Of a stretch of 64,000 bases of DNA, positions 16,412 to 29,423 are shown piece by piece. A program made the translations under genes and the position numbers. The notes beneath the pieces were generated by a model. That model was not told where the DNA came from. It did not search any database and saw nothing but the letters and a program-made list of their open reading frames with translations. Location of the stretch: the NCBI GenBank assembly GCA_033442325.1, contig JAWQFM010000003.1, positions 408,724 through 472,723 on the forward strand. Direction: 5' to 3'. Source of the DNA: Salpingoeca rosetta (Eukaryota; Protista; Choanoflagellata). Within the stretch, counting starts at the first letter, position 1. Every line of letters begins with the position of its first letter.

Positions 16412-22455
<6,044 letters not shown>

Positions 22456-22689
22456 GGGCACGACACCACAAAAGTAAATTCAGCAAGTTCTGAACATTCA
22501 TGCAAATCTTCAAACAATCGTCTCTTTGGTTAATATGCCAAGATATCGCCAATTCGGCGCAGCCACCATCTCCACACACACCAGCCAGCCAGCTCTCTCA
22601 CTCCTCGGCGCCACTGACTGACTCATCTGCTGTGCACCTCCTTCCCCCCCCCCCCCGCTTCCTTCCCTGTGTTGACGTGAGACGCGACG

Positions 22690-23825
22690 ATGCGAGCAAC
22701 TGCTGCGGTCGCGTTGGTGGCCTCGCTTGCGATGGCTGCCTTTGCTGCCGACCCAGAGCAATGCGGCCTGTACGAGTCTACTTGCCAAAACCTCGGCAAC
22801 GACAAAGTTTCGGTCAGTGCTTGCTTGTGTGTGTTTATGTGTTGTGGCATTGTCACATGCATTCGTGTGCTCGTTGTGCTGGTGCACGCATCGAGCGTGC
22901 AACTTGCCACGTGACGTGCCAGCACCAGTGCGTGCATGTCTGTGGTGGCAGCTGGATGTGTGTGTGTGTGCATCATGGGTGGGATCTGGCCTTGTTCTCA
23001 CCCAAGCGTTTTTGACAAACAAATGGCAATAGACCAGCATGGTCATCAGTGGGGCATACACTGGCGACATTCTCATTGTCACTGAGCGCTTCTCCGACGG
23101 CACTTGCAGTTCTGCGGTACGTGCACTCCACACGCAACGCGTGTTTGAAGGTTATGAGAGACACGCGCGTCATTGCTTCTGTTTTACCAGCCCATAATGC
23201 GCACCGCAGCGTTGTCCTGTGTGACCCTCATGTGCTTGTCCCACGTCCCACCCATACCAAACACTGAATGTGTGGTGCGTTTGTTGTCCTCATCTGTGGC
23301 TGGCCACAGGATGTCTCAATTCAAGCTGTCGGCCACTGGATGGATCTTGGCAACGACACTGGCGTGGTGCGTGCATGGGCGATGAGTTGTCGTGCGGTTT
23401 AGCTGCCGGTGGTGGTGGTCGTCGTGGTACCTGTTGTTGTTCATTGTGGTAGTGGATGCTCTTGGTCATTCTCGTTTTGGACATTGTGGTCGTCGATTTG
23501 GTGATGGTGTGGCCGTTGTCGTGGTGGTCATCGTTGTAGCCGTTGTCGTGGTGGTCTCGTTCTGCAACAACGCGATGCACCCCACTCTGTGCATTTCAGT
23601 GCCTTGTGGCTGAGCCTTTTGCATCGTGTCTTCCAACCTTGCCACATGCCCTCACTCCGATACGACCCTGCAGGGCCGCTACTGGCAAGTGACGTACTCC
23701 GAGGTGACGGTCACCCCAAACACGGACGCGTGGGTGCAGAAGCTGAACAACGAATGCCCTTGCACCGGCAAGTGGAAGAAGGGTCAGGAGCGCGCCCTCA
23801 CCGCCTGCGTCCCAGGTTCGCCAGT

Positions 23826-23892
<67 letters not shown>

Positions 23893-26144
23893 ACGTGCGT
23901 GTGTATGTGTGCGCGCGCGCGCGTGTGTGTGTGTGTGTTTGCACGTGCGTGTGTTTGCACGTGCGTGTGTATGTGTGCGCGTGTGTGCGCGTGTGTTTGT
24001 TTTGCTACCATTGTGTGAGTTTGTGTATCTGCCATTGTGTGTGTATTTTTCTGTTTTGGTGCACATGCCTTGCCCCCCCCCCCCTTGACACACCACCAAC
24101 GTACATGCATACATGGCATGTGTAGGCACGTGCGACACGACCGACTGGGTCGGCGGCCTTACTGGTGCCAACACCAAAGGCATCCAGATCGGCAACCCGG
24201 CATTTGGCTTCTCCTCCGTACGTAATTTGCATCACTGTATACCCCCATCGTGGCAACCCATGTGCCGTGCTAGTGATAACCCTCCCCCCTTCTCCTCCCT
24301 CTCCCAAGCTCACATGCAGGGCTTGTCGATGTTCCCTTGTTTCCCGCCATTGCGCGTGTCACCAGGCTGACGACAAGGAGATTACCATCTCGTTCCTGGA
24401 TGCGGACTACTCCACCGGCATCGGCCTCACACGGCAGGACACCTGGCAGACTGTCACACGCTCAGAAGGTGCCCCGTGGTGTTTCTGTGTATGCGTCCGT
24501 GTGGCTGTGCTTTTGTGTATGTGTGTGTGTGTGTGTTTGTGCGTGTGTGTCTCTCTGTGTGTCTGTGTGTGTGTGTAACATCGCCCTCCCTGTCACCCGT
24601 CTCTTCTCACTGCTGTCTGTTGCCGGCCAACCCACCGTGTGCCAGGGTGTGGAGCGACGACACCACGGCAGTCGTACTGCGGCGTGTGGACGCTTCGCTG
24701 CAGCCCCAGCTTCATCAGCGGCGCCATGGCCCGCACCGGCCAGTTTGTCTACGAGGGGCCCGTCGCTGATGTGCGTACGCGCCAGTGCACACAGGGCCAG
24801 CGCGCTGCTGTCTTGTGCCGTTCTTTCATTCGTGTGTGTGTGTGTATGTGTATGTGTGTGTGTGCGTGTGTGTATGTTTGTTGATGTGTTTTTGATGGTA
24901 GAGATATAACACTGTACATGCATTTGCATGCTTGATGGGGACACCTTCGTCCTCTCCTCCTTCCCTCTGTGATGTTTCCCACACACTCACCCACTCCTCC
25001 TCCCTCTCTCCCCGGCACACGCGCACACTTGTACACACGCCATGCACCTCAGCTGTATGCGTCTGGCATCTACAAGGACAAGACTACGTACTACGCCGAC
25101 TCTGCGTGCGCCACCCCCATGTTCAGCGTGGAGACGGAGGCCACCTTTGAGACCAACGGCGTCAACATCAACATTGACGTGTGTTTGGCACCCGCTTGCT
25201 CCACTGTCACCCTCGTTTGTGCACTTTGCACCGCAGCTTGCCCATGCCCAAAGTTCAATGCACACGCACACACACGTGCACACGTGCATGCACACGCACG
25301 CACGCACGCACACACACATACATGCACACATGCACACACGCACGCGCACACATACACATGCATACATGCACATGCACACATACACACACGCACACGCACG
25401 CACACAATACACACACTCTCACACCACAACAACTCGAACGCGACACCGCCGACAACGGCTACAGGGTGCGGACATGGTGAAATACAACGCGCCGTTCATG
25501 CTGGTGCGCCCGCTGACGGACGACGCGACCAAGATGCTCAAGCACGACTGCCCCTGCGGCAACCAGGACCTGTGGGCCACCAACACCGCACGCCGCCTCA
25601 CCTCGTGCACCCTCGAGCAGTGCAACGTCGACTTCTGGAACAACCAGACGCTGACAGCGGGCACCTTCCACGGCAACATGTATGCGGTGTCACGCAACGA
25701 CTCCACACCTGAGCTGCGCCGCACCCCCGTCGTGTCGACGCCGTTCCAGGCCAAGTCGCAGAGGCCCGGCGACCTGCAGGAGCCATACATTCTCTCTGAG
25801 GACACGTGCAAGTACCCTTACGACTCTGTGCTTGAGATCTGCGGGTCGTGGAACCAGAAGTGCCATGGCGTGCTTGCCGCTGACGAGGAGATTAGCCTGG
25901 TTATCACAGGCAGTGCCGGTGACCCGTCCCAGGGAGAGGTGAGGCTGCAACTCCATGCACTGTGATGCACTGTGAAGCACTGTGGTGCGTTGTGATGCAG
26001 TGGTGTCGTGTTTGGCGTGTCGTGGGTCACGTTCGTCCAACACCTTAGGAGTGGTGGTCGTGGTGGTCGTGGTCGTGGTGGTGGTGCAGCTGCAGCTTGA
26101 CTGTGTGGGCCTCTGCGCCGCAAACACTCCTTCCGTTTTCCATC

Positions 26145-26178
<34 letters not shown>

Positions 26179-26796
26179 GCAAACACACACAAACACACAC
26201 ACACACACAAACACAAACACACGCAAACACACATAAACACACGCAAACACACACACACACATTTACACGAAAACACACGCAAACACGAACACACACACAC
26301 ACACATATACACACATATACACACATATACACACATATACACACAGGGCACGGGTGTGATCACGCGGGAGCGGCTGCGCTACCAGCACGGCAGCGGGTGC
26401 TCCAGCGAGCCGTCCATGATGATCAACGACGTTGGCTACTGGACAGACATGGGCAACAGCACCACCGTCCCCGGCGCGCGCAACATCCTCATCACCTTCA
26501 CCGAGACAGTTGCAGAGGTGTTTGACAACACCTCACGGGCGCTGCTGAACAACCACTTCAACGGCTGCCCCTGCAACGGCACGTGGGAGATTGGTCGGGC
26601 GCGTGTGCTGCACAAGTGCCCGCCCAAGACGTGCCCAGACCGCTTTGGCATCTTTGGCAACGGCGCCATCGGCACGCCTGGCTACGGCATCATCCGCGAC
26701 CAGGAGGTGTGTTGGCGCTGGTGGTGCATGTAGTGTTGGTACCCGTGGCTGGTTGTCGTCTTAGGAGGTTGTGTGTGTGTGGATGTGTGTGTGTGG

Positions 26797-26842
<46 letters not shown>

Positions 26843-28969
26843 NNNNNNNNNNNNNNNNNNNNNNNNNNNNNNNNNNNNNNNNNNNNNNNNNNNNNNNNNN
26901 NNNNNNNNNNNNNNNNNNNNNNNNNNNNNNNNNNNNNNNNNNNNNNNNNNNNNNNNNNNNNNNNNNNNNNNNNNNNNNNNNNNNNNNNNNNNNNNNNNNN
27001 NNNNNNNNNNNNNNNNNNNNNNNNNNNNNNNNNNNNNNNNNNNNNNNNNNNNNNNNNNNNNNNNNNNNNNNNNNNNNNNNNNNNNNNNNNNNNNNNNNNN
27101 NNNNNNNNNNNNNNNNNNNNNNNNNNNNNNNNNNNNNNNNNNNNNNNNNNNNNNNNNNNNNNNNNNNNNNNNNNNNNNNNNNNNNNNNNNNNNNNNNNNN
27201 NNNNNNNNNNNNNNNNNNNNGTGTGTGTGTGGAGTGTGTGTGTGTGGAGTGTGTGTGTGTGTGTGTGTGTGTGTGGATGTGTGTGTGTGTGTTGCTGGAC
27301 TCTGCGTGCTTTGTGTATCATCCTTCTCCACCTCTTCCTTCTCATCGTCCTCCGCCTCTTCCTTCTCATCGTCCTCTTCTTTCATTTTGAAACCCGTCCT
27401 CACATCATCACATCACGAACACGCTGCGTGCTCCCCTCGTCTCCACGCCCTTATTCCGTTCCCTCATCTTATCGCGTTCGTCCTTGACCACCAGGACCTG
27501 TTCCGCATGTCATCGCTGCACGACAACCCAACGGACGGCTTTGACGAGTTCCTTCAGCTTGATGACTACCCCTTCCACCAGACAGAGCTCTGCCGCCCAC
27601 CGCCGCTGGAGGATGAGTATGGTGGGGTGTGGGAGCGCCCGTGCAACCCCGGTGACGCTGGCCTTGACTTCAAGGGCGTCATGGAGATTAAGGGCAACAA
27701 GTACGAGATGAGGCACACCTTCTACACCGCAGGCTTTGGCTGCCTCGGCACCGTGGCCCTCCGCTTCCTGCAGCAGGGCAAGGTGAGAAAGCAAGAGCAC
27801 AGCATGGTTTTGGGGGGGGGGGTGTGAAAAGTGATATGCCGCTGTTGCTGGTGATCGCAGTGCCCATCTCCTTGCCATTCCAGCCTGCTCCCCTCCCCCA
27901 CCTTCTCCATCACAAGTAATCAGTATCCTTCGCTCACATTGACGCCGCCACCCCCACCTTCCCCTTCCTCCCCCTCCCCCCCCCCCCACTTCCTTATTCC
28001 GAGCAGATTGACATTGGGTCGCGGCCAAACCAGATCCCCAACGGTCGGGAGCTGACGCTCAAGCCGGCCGCCTTTGAGGTCACCCCGCTCAACCAGGATG
28101 CCGTCAACGCCCTCACTCAGGAGTGCCCCTGCAGTGTTGGCGCCACAATCTGGGCCGTCAACCGCACCATCACGTACGCCTGAGCCAATGTGCATGCATG
28201 CGTCTGGGTCTGTGTGTGTTGGAATATAAAACCTGTCTGCCTCTATTTTATGTGTGTGCATGCCTGTGTCTGGGTCCATGTGTGTATCTATGTATATCGG
28301 TCTGTTTCTCTTTATGTGTGCATGGGCGGCTGTCGTGCGCGCGTATGTGGAAGTTTTTCTGCGTGTTTCTGCTTCGCCCACCTGCGTGTCCGTCTGACCC
28401 TTCATTCTCTCGTACCTGCTCGCTTGCGCGTCCTCACGCTTCCGTGCTGTCATCATGCCATGTCTCGATGGCTCTGTTGCCTTGGCCTTTGCTTCACCTC
28501 TCCCTGCAGCTTCAAGCAACCATGCCCGCCCAACACCTGCAACAACTTTGCTTTCCTTCGCCAGCCACTCGGTAACGCGAACCGCACAACACTACCTCTG
28601 ATTTGATCGCTGCGGGGGTGGGACTGGCGTCGTCCCAGCTGTGCATTTGCCGCCCAATCGACCACCACATCGCTCATGCTGTGCTGCTCCACCAACTACT
28701 CACTCCACTTCCCATGTTTGACTGTCTTCCATGTGTATTTCGCTGTGTCCACAGGTGGGCACGCCTACGGCGTGCTGCTTCGTTACGGCCAGTTCCTGCG
28801 CATGACCAAACTCCTCAGCGACAAGGTCCACGGCTTTGCACAGGTACGACCGTTCGTTCGTTTGTTTGTTTGTTCACTTTGCCATGTATGTGGGACGGGG
28901 TGTATCTTCAACTGTGCATTTGCCAGTGTGTTGCTTTACCTTGGCTGCGTTTGTTTGGCCAAGGCACAC

Positions 28970-29011
<42 letters not shown>

Positions 29012-29423
29012 CTCTCTCTCTCTCTCTCGCACACTCGCACTTACACGCTCGCACACACACACATGTACACGCTCGCACACACTGTCTGTGCCACAGAGCT
29101 TCACAGCGCAGGACTTCTACTGGGTGCTGGCCAAGTCTGCGTCAAACAAGTCGGGCAACAAAGGCATTGATGCTGGCGGCGTGCTGCTGCTCATTGCTTT
29201 CTTTGGCGGCCTGGCCTATCTCGCCGCAGGCATGGTCTTCAACTACCAGCGCTCGGGCGTGCCTCGCATCCCGCACGCGGAGTTCTGGACCAGCCTGCCC
29301 GGCCTCATCAGCGACGGCTTTGCGTTCACGCTCTCTGGCTTTGGTCTGTTTGGCCGCAGCCGCAAGTATGCGGCTATGACCAACGTCGCGGAGACAGACA
29401 CCTCCAGCTACGGCGCCCTCTAG
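22690..29423 (+). CDS. Type I membrane protein: signal peptide, four APCDD1-like repeats, ATG27/CD-M6PR-type TM and cytoplasmic tail; about 15 exons, spans the assembly gap
   Basis: Signal [19 protein letters not shown]. Each repeat starts (C/G)Gx(W/Y)xxxC and contains a V(T/R)P-like strand followed by CPC...W. Last exon (~29097-29423) reads [56 protein letters not shown]...SSYGAL. Confidence 0.8.
26843..27220. other. Assembly gap (N run) inside a (GT)n intron
   Basis: 378 N bases flanked by GT microsatellite. Confidence 0.99.

What the first reader, a model, noticed from the sequence alone, without database searches (positions are those of the whole stretch)
22690..29423. Four APCDD1-like domains fused to an ATG27/M6PR sorting-receptor tail: candidate lipid-ligand uptake or sorting receptor
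Seen in sequence: four internal repeats that start QCGLYESTC / YCGVWTLRC / ICGSWNQKC / YGGVWERPC and contain NECPCTGKW / [11 protein letters not shown] / NGCPCNGTW / [12 protein letters not shown], plus [12 protein letters not shown] and VTP.....LN segments. These are followed by a TM and the tail [20 protein letters not shown]. Established: IPxxxFWxxLPxLxxDG after the TM is the signature of the cation-dependent M6P receptor/ATG27 family. Animal APCDD1 has two lipid-binding beta-barrel domains and inhibits lipidated Wnt, and choanoflagellates are not known to have Wnt. Inference: the MRH cargo domain of a trafficking receptor has been replaced by lipid-binding barrels. This would give a pre-Wnt function for the APCDD1 fold, perhaps capturing lipids or lipidated proteins. 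Bacterial signalling lipids such as rosette-inducing sulfonolipids are a speculative ligand.
Basis: partly seen in the sequence, partly recalled or inferred. Interest (0 to 1): 0.85.

Follow-up and report, generated by a model that had tools for sequence, protein, structure and literature searches.

The report
APCDD1-like four-barrel receptor, Atg27 tail
A choanoflagellate gene encodes a membrane protein with four copies of the beta-barrel domain of the animal Wnt inhibitor APCDD1, joined to the membrane anchor and sorting tail of the Atg27/mannose-6-phosphate-receptor family; the combination is real, conserved across choanoflagellates and unstudied, but what it binds is not known.

Summary
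Window 22690-29423 (+) is one 15-exon gene. All introns are GT-AG and the frame is continuous. My hand-built 872-aa product is identical to the annotated Salpingoeca rosetta hypothetical protein PTSG_11853.

The assembly gap (26843-27220) lies inside intron 10. Orthologous transcripts read straight across that junction, so no exon appears to be lost.

The four repeats are true homologues of each other and of APCDD1:
- A 52-row domain profile hits only mouse APCDD1 in the PDB (E 7.5e-17, both ABD1 and ABD2).
- Both AlphaFold tandem models (pLDDT 87 and 91) have APCDD1 as their eight best Foldseek hits (E 1e-11 to 4e-15).

The transmembrane helix and tail pass Pfam ATG27, on the tail part of that model only. 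There is no MRH domain. The tail ends in a conserved YxxPhi motif (YGAL), as yeast Atg27 does (YSAV, an AP-3 signal).

The whole architecture is conserved in at least eight choanoflagellate species of both orders.

Most likely it is a receptor that cycles through the endolysosomal system and carries barrels for hydrophobic ligands. Lipid binding, ligand and location are inferred, not shown. I could not obtain RNA read evidence or compute cavities. This is a new domain combination of known parts, of moderate interest.

The parts
22690..29423 (+). Whole coding region, 15 exons, 872 aa: 22690-22812, 23033-23116, 23310-23366, 23674-23815, 24126-24217, 24366-24468, 24646-24770, 25053-25178, 25465-25938, 26347-26706, 27495-27782, 28007-28173, 28510-28571, 28755-28843, 29097-29423 (stop included)
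   Evidence: Hand model with GT-AG at every intron and a continuous frame. Identical to NCBI PTSG_11853. Residue-to-genome map.
22690..22749 (+). Signal peptide, residues 1-20
   Evidence: N-terminal hydrophobic segment. Aligned hydrophobic N-termini in 13 orthologues.
22753..24467 (+). APCDD1-like barrel D1 (residues 22-200; exons 1-6)
   Evidence: AlphaFold D1-D2 model: pLDDT 91.4, pTM 0.87. Foldseek: top 8 hits all mouse APCDD1, E 4e-15 to 3e-14, next hit 8e-4.
24468..25803 (+). APCDD1-like barrel D2 (residues 201-397; exons 6-9)
   Evidence: Pfam APCDDC 22 bits, below the cut-off of 27. The same region of orthologues scores 40 and 28.5 bits. Family profile aligns it to APCDD1 ABD1. Fold.
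25804..27584 (+). APCDD1-like barrel D3 (residues 398-592; exons 9-11; spans the gap-bearing intron 10)
   Evidence: AlphaFold D3-D4 model: pLDDT 86.7. Foldseek: top 8 hits all APCDD1, E 4e-13 to 1e-11, next hit 6e-3. VIA-align Z 13.7 over 296 residues.
27585..29129 (+). APCDD1-like barrel D4 (residues 593-775; exons 11-15)
   Evidence: Family profile aligns it to APCDD1 ABD2. Fold. Next-best structural neighbour is the bile-salt-binding barrel VtrC, Z 9.4.
26707..27494 (+). Intron 10, which contains the assembly gap 26843-27220 inside a TG microsatellite
   Evidence: GT at 26707 and AG at 27493-27494, phase 0 on both sides. Sequence either side of the Ns is (TG)n. Orthologues are collinear across the junction.
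29181..29243 (+). Transmembrane helix, residues 793-813
   Evidence: The only internal segment with Kyte-Doolittle mean above 1.6. Part of the Pfam ATG27 match.
29244..29420 (+). Cytosolic tail, residues 814-872. Includes the membrane-proximal motif [20 protein letters not shown] (29268-29327) and the C-terminal YGAL (29409-29420).
   Evidence: Pfam ATG27: 36 bits on the last exon alone and 31 bits on the whole protein, model positions 183-250 of 261. Man-6-P_recep: 14-19 bits, below its cut-off. Motif and terminal YxxPhi kept in 17 of about 20 full-length relatives.

Best explanation
PTSG_11853 is a type I membrane glycoprotein.

SHOWN: after a signal peptide it carries four tandem beta-barrel domains homologous to the ABD barrels of animal APCDD1. 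These are followed by one TM helix and a 59-residue cytosolic tail of the Atg27/cation-dependent-M6P-receptor type.

INFERRED: the tail carries two sorting elements known from yeast Atg27. One is a membrane-proximal conserved block (here IPHxxFWxxLPGLxxDG), which lies where Atg27 residues needed for Snx4-dependent retrieval lie. The other is a YxxPhi motif at the very C-terminus (YGAL; Atg27 has YSAV, which binds AP-3). The protein would therefore cycle between the Golgi, endosomes, the lysosome or food vacuole, and probably the cell surface.

INFERRED, weaker: one or more of the four barrels hold a small hydrophobic ligand such as a fatty acid, sterol or other lipid, as APCDD1 ABD2 does. The protein would then capture or ferry lipids, or lipid-bearing cargo, within the endolysosomal system of a cell that feeds on bacteria.
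For: Gene structure and identity:
- (model identical to the annotated protein).

Homology of the repeats to APCDD1:
- The family profile A1 hits only APCDD1 in the PDB, E 2.7e-8.
- The stacked 52-row domain profile A5 gives E 7.5e-17 and aligns to both ABD1 (52-178) and ABD2 (270-382).
- Orthologues pass Pfam APCDDC at 40 and 28.5 bits.

Fold:
- Two confident AlphaFold tandem models.
- APCDD1 chains are the top 8 Foldseek hits for each, followed by a gap of 9 to 11 orders of magnitude in E-value.
- VIA-align Z 13.7.
- A chordate APCDD1 cluster is the top hit in the ESM Atlas.
- Other structural neighbours are ligand-binding calycin-type barrels: VtrC with bile salt, nitrobindin, Rv0813.

Tail:
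- Pfam ATG27 above its cut-off in this protein and in 7 of 9 full-length relatives tested.
- The tail profile A3 finds the canonical Atg27-like gene of the same genome at E 1.4e-16. That gene matches Pfam ATG27 through luminal part and tail, 51.5 bits.
- Atg27 literature: YSAV 268-271 binds AP-3, and tail residues 222-237 are needed for Snx4 retrieval (PMC5940307).

Conservation of the whole architecture:
- Present in both choanoflagellate orders.
- Thirty conserved cysteines and 8 N-glycosylation sequons fit a luminal or extracellular domain.
Against: - There is no direct evidence for ligand, location or trafficking.
- Pfam APCDDC is below its cut-off on this protein itself (19-22 bits against 27).
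- In APCDD1 only one of the two barrels has a sizeable pocket, so fold homology does not predict a cavity (PMC10193966). I had no model coordinates to measure one.
- The predicted relative orientation of neighbouring barrels differs from the APCDD1 crystal (whole-model TM 0.32-0.39, rmsd 18-21 angstroms).
- Tail motifs are short, and their function in choanoflagellates is untested.
Confidence: 0.5

Rival explanations
1. A sorting receptor for proteins rather than free lipids. The barrels would recognise protein cargo, possibly lipid-modified or hydrophobic proteins such as hydrolases or saposin-like factors, in the Golgi and deliver it to the food vacuole. This would work as M6P receptors, sortilin or the Entamoeba CPBF receptors do.
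For: The tail is of the type used by cargo receptors that cycle between the TGN and endosomes (PMC2120581 for CD-MPR cycling). APCDD1 itself binds a protein, WNT7A, probably through its lipid (PMC10193966). Four tandem domains would give multivalent binding.
Against: No cargo is known. Nothing in the sequence marks a protein-binding surface. Atg27, the closest tail relative, is not itself known as a cargo receptor.
Confidence: 0.15
2. A resident, heavily disulfide-bonded and glycosylated protein of the lysosome or food-vacuole membrane, LAMP-like. It would protect or organise the membrane, and its barrels would have no specific ligand.
For: A G/S-Y-x-x-Phi motif at the extreme C-terminus is the classic arrangement of LAMP-type lysosomal membrane proteins (from established knowledge) and of Atg27 (PMC5940307). 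It is conserved here. There are 30 cysteines and 8 glycosylation sequons. ABD1 of APCDD1 shows that such barrels can lack a pocket (PMC10193966).
Against: Strong conservation of barrel-core motifs over four domains and eight species suggests more than a spacer role. The membrane-proximal retrieval-type block argues for cycling rather than residence.
Confidence: 0.15
3. A cell-surface binder or regulator of an extracellular hydrophobic or lipid-modified signal, taken up by endocytosis through the YxxPhi motif.
For: APCDD1 works at the cell surface on a lipidated ligand (PMC10193966). YxxPhi motifs also bind AP-2 (established knowledge). About 10% of M6P receptors are at the surface (PMC9988951).
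Against: [quoted passage not shown] No ligand candidate has any support in the data. The tail type is best known from intracellular cycling proteins.
Confidence: 0.1
4. An Atg27-like function in Atg9-vesicle traffic and autophagy, with the luminal domain merely exchanged.
For: The best Pfam family for the tail is ATG27.
Against: The genome has a separate canonical Atg27-like gene with the luminal domain (L002, 51.5 bits). At least three further genes share the tail, so the tail looks like a general sorting module.
Confidence: 0.05
5. A gene-model artefact: the tail exon or some repeats belong to a neighbouring gene, or an exon is hidden in the gap.
For: The gap lies within the gene.
Against: Assembled transcripts from other species encode the same collinear protein, end to end, including the tail. 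The exon 10-11 junction aligns without an indel. Phases and splice sites are all consistent.
Confidence: 0.02

Closest known systems
Animal APCDD1 / APCDD1L (Pfam APCDDC PF14921; mouse structures 8E0P, 8E0R, 8E0W)
   Same: Type I membrane protein whose ectodomain is made of tandem APCDD1-type beta-barrels. Shared sequence landmarks are GxW..C at the start, the YY..C strand, and VTP...L..C...W. APCDD1 is the only significant PDB match by sequence profile and by fold.
   Different: Four barrels instead of two. About 12-14% identity to the mouse protein in structural alignment. Eight cysteines per barrel with a CPC motif, against 12 in the whole APCDD1 ectodomain. Predicted inter-barrel orientation differs. 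A long Atg27-type sorting tail that I recall APCDD1 lacks (its tail is very short; from memory, not tested here). The organism lacks detectable Wnt (PMC6040629).
Yeast Atg27 and its family (Pfam ATG27 PF09451)
   Same: TM helix plus a conserved membrane-proximal cytosolic block, and a YxxPhi motif at the very C-terminus. The Pfam match is above its cut-off. The same genome's canonical Atg27-like gene has a near-identical block, IPNREFWASLPGLVQDGFYF, and ends in YAQI.
   Different: The match covers only model positions 183-250. The luminal MRH-like domain of Atg27 is absent and its place is taken by four APCDD1-type barrels.
[quoted passage not shown]
   Same: Type I topology. Similar membrane-proximal tail block containing a Phe-Trp pair (the role of that pair in CD-MPR retrieval is from memory of the literature, not tested here).
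   Different: The Pfam score is below its cut-off (14-19 bits against 25.4). There is no MRH domain or M6P-binding residues. It has a terminal YxxPhi motif, whereas I recall an acidic dileucine at the end of CD-MPR (from memory).
Calycin-type ligand-binding barrels (lipocalins, FABP/P2, VtrC, nitrobindin)
   Same: Small closed beta-barrel with a following helix. VtrC (a bile-salt binder) is the next-best structural neighbour of D4: Z 9.4, rmsd 4.0 over 116 residues.
   Different: No sequence similarity. Clearly weaker than the APCDD1 match.

Membership tests
APCDD1 domain family (PF14921) | Match to the Pfam APCDDC model at or above the gathering score (27 bits) | tested here: inconclusive
   This protein scores 19.1 bits whole and 22 bits on D2 alone, below the cut-off. 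Orthologues P0002 (40 bits) and P0005 (28.5 bits) pass in the same region.
APCDD1 domain family (PF14921) | Significant sequence-profile similarity to a solved APCDD1 | tested here: met
   A5 profile against the PDB: 8e0r E 7.5e-17 (65 bits), covering both ABD1 and ABD2. There are no other significant hits. A1 profile E 2.7e-8.
APCDD1 domain family (PF14921) | ABD beta-barrel fold | tested here: met
   Foldseek E 4e-15 to 1e-11, probability 1.00, about 400 aligned columns for both tandem models. VIA-align Z 12.9-13.7. These are predicted models, not experimental structures.
APCDD1 proper (orthologue of the animal Wnt inhibitor) | Two-barrel ectodomain, 12 conserved cysteines with one interdomain disulfide, short tail | tested here: not met
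   Four barrels, 30 cysteines and a 59-residue Atg27-type tail. The inter-barrel packing of the models differs from the crystal (TM 0.32-0.39).
APCDD1 proper (orthologue of the animal Wnt inhibitor) | Large hydrophobic pocket in a barrel, with lipid or Wnt binding | not testable with these tools
No ligand assay is possible.
Atg27 family (PF09451) | Match to the Pfam ATG27 model above the gathering score (27 bits) | tested here: met
   31.2 bits on the whole protein and 36.1-36.3 bits on the tail alone. Relatives score 26.7-40.7 bits.
Atg27 family (PF09451) | Luminal MRH-like domain (model positions about 1-180) | tested here: not met
   The match covers model positions 183-250 only. The ectodomain folds as APCDD1-type barrels.
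Atg27 family (PF09451) | C-terminal tyrosine-based sorting motif (YSAV in yeast) | tested here: met
   The protein ends in YGAL. YxxPhi at the terminus is present in 17 of about 20 full-length relatives. The function of the motif is not tested. The yeast motif is from PMC5940307.
Cation-dependent M6P receptor (PF02157) | Pfam Man-6-P_recep above 25.4 bits, and an MRH domain | tested here: not met
   14.2-18.7 bits, tail part only.

The most novel reading that the evidence does not exclude
The APCDD1 barrel first served, in the common ancestor of choanoflagellates and animals, as the luminal part of an endolysosomal receptor that scavenges or sorts lipids and is driven by an Atg27-type tail. 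Animal APCDD1 would then be a cut-down, surface-retained derivative, later co-opted to bind the palmitoleate of Wnt. The choanoflagellate protein would preserve the ancestral job and give a tractable model for what APCDD1 barrels bind.
Probability: 0.15. Interest if true: 0.75.

Novelty: new variant of a known kind. Interest (0 to 1): 0.5.

Why it matters
APCDD1 is known only as an animal Wnt and BMP-pathway inhibitor, and its structure (2023) showed a lipid-binding barrel of unclear origin. Here a clear relative occurs in the sister group of animals, which lacks detectable Wnt. It has a different architecture that is conserved across that group, and it is tied to a sorting tail of the endolysosomal system.

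This gives a testable hypothesis for what the barrel did before Wnt existed. It also shows that the Atg27/CD-MPR tail is a portable sorting module: at least five genes in this genome carry it. S. rosetta has working transfection and genome editing, so localisation, tail mutants, knockouts and lipidomics of the ectodomain are all feasible.

No function is shown. The parts are known and the protein is already in databases as 'hypothetical', so the value is that of a good lead, not a discovery.

Tried and rejected
Splice junctions in S. rosetta are therefore not confirmed by reads.
2. Run-level hints only. Thirteen likely-RNA runs hold 0.60-0.67 of the words of an exon-intron-exon stretch that is 0.67 exon. 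Most of them are not among the listed holders of intron 12. The lists are capped, so this is only suggestive.
3. Pfam APCDDC against the six-frame genome found nothing, not even this gene, so that search is uninformative.
4. Searches of the 5.8-billion-protein collection with the tandem profile A2 and with the tail region returned only this protein, a 235-aa fragment and one orthologue. These blanks mean little because of the word index and the length limits.
Bacterial relatives rest only on ESM Atlas leads.
6. The idea that the four domains arose by duplicating a two-barrel unit (D1~D3, D2~D4) looked possible from single-sequence BLAST. Profile-profile scores did not bear it out: D3-D4 and D1-D3 are both near 1e-34 and all other pairs are 1e-25 to 1e-27.
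7. Cavity measurement was not possible because model coordinates are not exposed.
8. A second APCDD1-like gene in this genome (see the first-stage note on a lipase fusion) was not found with the A2 or A5 profiles at E up to 1.

Full report
**What is in the window**

Between 22690 and 29423 on the + strand the three-frame translation shows coding pieces separated by TG/CA-microsatellite-rich introns. I joined them by hand into 15 exons. Every intron is GT-AG, the phases are consistent, and the product is 872 aa.

A database search seeded with an orthologue returned 'hypothetical protein PTSG_11853 [Salpingoeca rosetta]', also 872 aa. It is letter-for-letter identical to my model. The same protein is recorded on a 2.2-Mb scaffold of GCA_000188695.1. 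The genome handle is 55.4 Mb in 68 contigs.

**The gap**

The Ns at 26843-27220 lie in intron 10 (26707-27494), flanked on both sides by (TG)n. Exons 10 and 11 join in phase 0.

In the 13-species alignment the junction (GIIRDQE|DLFRMSS) aligns without any indel to transcript-derived orthologues. It also parallels the same segment of domain 4. I see no sign of a lost exon.

**RNA evidence**

Indirect hints are these:
- Many probable RNA runs hold 0.60-0.67 of the words of a stretch that is 67% exon.
- Most of them are not listed as holding intron 12.

**The repeats are real and are APCDD1-type domains**
- Within the protein, the four roughly 185-residue domains match each other by BLASTP down to E 6e-16.
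- Across 13 species, the four domain alignments match each other by hhalign at E 1e-25 to 6e-35.
- Pfam APCDDC is below its cut-off on this protein (19-22 bits against 27). It is above the cut-off in two orthologues (40 and 28.5 bits).
- A profile of the 13 full-length proteins hits only APCDD1 in the PDB (E 2.7e-8).
- A stacked profile of all 52 single domains gives E 7.5e-17 and aligns to both ABD1 (52-178) and ABD2 (270-382) of the mouse protein. It shares the GxW..C start, the YY..C strand and the VTP...L..C..W segment.
- The AlphaFold model of D3-D4 has pLDDT 86.7 and pTM 0.73. The model of D1-D2 has pLDDT 91.4 and pTM 0.87.
- For each model the eight best Foldseek hits in the PDB are all mouse APCDD1 chains (E 4e-13 to 1e-11 and 4e-15 to 3e-14). 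The next hits are at 6e-3 and 8e-4.
- VIA-align gives Z 12.9-13.7 over 296-322 residues.
- In the ESM Atlas the best structural match is a chordate APCDD1 cluster.

Whole-model TM scores are low (0.32-0.39) with rmsd of about 20 angstroms. The predicted packing of neighbouring barrels therefore differs from the crystal, where ABD1 and ABD2 sit at about 90 degrees and share a disulfide (PMC10193966).

**Cysteines**

Thirty cysteines are conserved.

In domain 4, the four species closest to S. rosetta lack both the first cysteine (CGxW) and the cysteine in the juxtamembrane segment. The other nine species have both. This correlated loss suggests that the first cysteine of a barrel pairs with the cysteine just after it. 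That pairing is an inference.

**The tail**

The only internal hydrophobic segment is residues 793-813.

The last exon alone scores 36 bits on Pfam ATG27 (cut-off 27), and the whole protein scores 31 bits. The match covers model positions 183-250 of 261, that is the TM helix and tail and not the luminal domain. Man-6-P_recep is below its cut-off.

The block NY...G.P.IPHxxFWxxLPGLxxDGxxF is conserved in 13 species. The protein ends in YGAL, and relatives end in YG[AST]L, YNTL and similar.

Yeast Atg27 ends in YSAV, which binds AP-3 and sends it to the vacuole. Residues 222-237 of its tail are needed for Snx4-dependent retrieval (PMC5940307). The CD-MPR tail likewise carries determinants that keep the receptor cycling and out of lysosomes (PMC2120581).

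A profile of the tail finds four more places in this genome:
- L002 is a canonical Atg27-like gene. It scores 51.5 bits on Pfam ATG27 through luminal part and tail, carries IPNREFWASLPGLVQDGFYF and ends in YAQI.
- L003 and L004 also pass ATG27 or Man-6-P_recep on the tail.
- L005 is the fourth place. I tested only its upstream ORFs against Pfam, and they matched nothing.

The tail is therefore a shared module in this organism.

**Distribution**

A full scan of 1.84 billion representatives with exon 10 found 42 proteins. About twenty are 820-950 aa and collinear with this protein from end to end.

Named members are all choanoflagellates, from both orders:
- Craspedida: S. rosetta, S. infusionum, S. 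helianthica, Craspedida sp. UC1 and Monosiga brevicollis (a messy gene model).
- Acanthoecida: Didymoeca costata, Diaphanoeca grandis and Bicosta minor.

Many are Trinity ORFs flagged 'complete' or sit on 2.8-3.3-kb contigs, so they are transcripts.

In the S. rosetta genome only this gene carries the domain at E up to 1. No paper in the library mentions the locus tag, or APCDD1 together with choanoflagellates.

**How it most likely works**

Shown: a signal peptide, four APCDD1-type barrels, a TM helix and an Atg27-type tail, all conserved.

Inferred: the tail drives cycling through the Golgi, endosomes, the lysosome or food vacuole, and the cell surface. One or more barrels bind a hydrophobic ligand.

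The caution is that in APCDD1 only ABD2 has a large pocket (about 350 against about 35 cubic angstroms), set by two gate loops (PMC10193966). I could not compute cavities.

The rivals are a protein-cargo receptor, a LAMP-like resident protein, a surface sensor or regulator, and an autophagy role. They are listed with odds in the Rival explanations section.

[quoted passage not shown] Bacterial single-domain clusters labelled APCDD1 domain-containing protein in the ESM Atlas hint that the barrel is older still. I could not verify this.

**Verdict**

The functional reading is plausible but untested, and the sulfonolipid idea has no support. This is a new combination of two known modules that defines a choanoflagellate-wide family of unknown function.

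Noticed in passing
G000:C21:42718-42999 (-), locus L002 ORF 1504-2019 (-): Canonical Atg27-like gene of the same genome. It matches Pfam ATG27 at 51.5 bits through luminal part and tail, carries the tail block IPNREFWASLPGLVQDGFYF and ends in YAQI.
   Followed up: partly
L003 (G000:C16:349039-349260 -), L004 (G000:C3:1943346-1943543 -), L005 (G000:C18:389822-389947 +): Three more genes with the same TM-plus-tail module. L004 scores 34 bits on Man-6-P_recep and ends in YDSL. L003 scores 28.6 bits on ATG27. L005 has a Pro-rich stalk and a Cys-rich upstream exon, and is probably the 'WSC plus tail' gene of a first-stage note. Pfam found no WSC domain on the ORF I tested. Their ectodomains were not resolved.
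   Followed up: partly
The stretch is CA-microsatellite-like intron sequence. I did not send it to any search tool afterwards.
   Followed up: no
window 22813-29096, most introns: Introns are packed with (TG)n or (CA)n microsatellites. These create long spurious Cys/Val- or His/Thr-rich ORFs on both strands and probably caused the assembly gap.
   Followed up: no
proteins P0014 (581 aa), P0021 (546 aa), P0026 (498 aa): Shorter relatives from environmental assemblies with two domain matches and the same tail or YGAL/YGSL end. They may be two-barrel paralogues or truncated contigs. One cluster mate of P0014 is 1017 aa.
   Followed up: no
protein P0071 (Salpingoeca helianthica, 1118 aa) and P0013 (878 aa): S. 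helianthica has two family members, so the family has paralogues in some species.
   Followed up: no
protein P0034 (Monosiga brevicollis MONBRDRAFT_36955, 917 aa): The M. brevicollis relative aligns only over residues 108-648 and is named GPI-anchor transamidase in UniRef. It is probably a fused or mis-predicted gene model.
   Followed up: no
ESM Atlas clusters: Single-domain bacterial proteins of 180-220 aa (Actinomycetota, Bacteroidota, Myxococcota, Bdellovibrionota). Some are labelled APCDD1 domain-containing, with TM 0.61-0.74 to domain 4. This is a lead that the barrel predates eukaryotes.
   Followed up: no
window 21196-22461 (-): Upstream, on the opposite strand, is a long ORF rich in His, Arg and Ser runs. 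It is probably the last or only exon of the neighbouring 973-aa gene seen in L012. Not examined.
   Followed up: no
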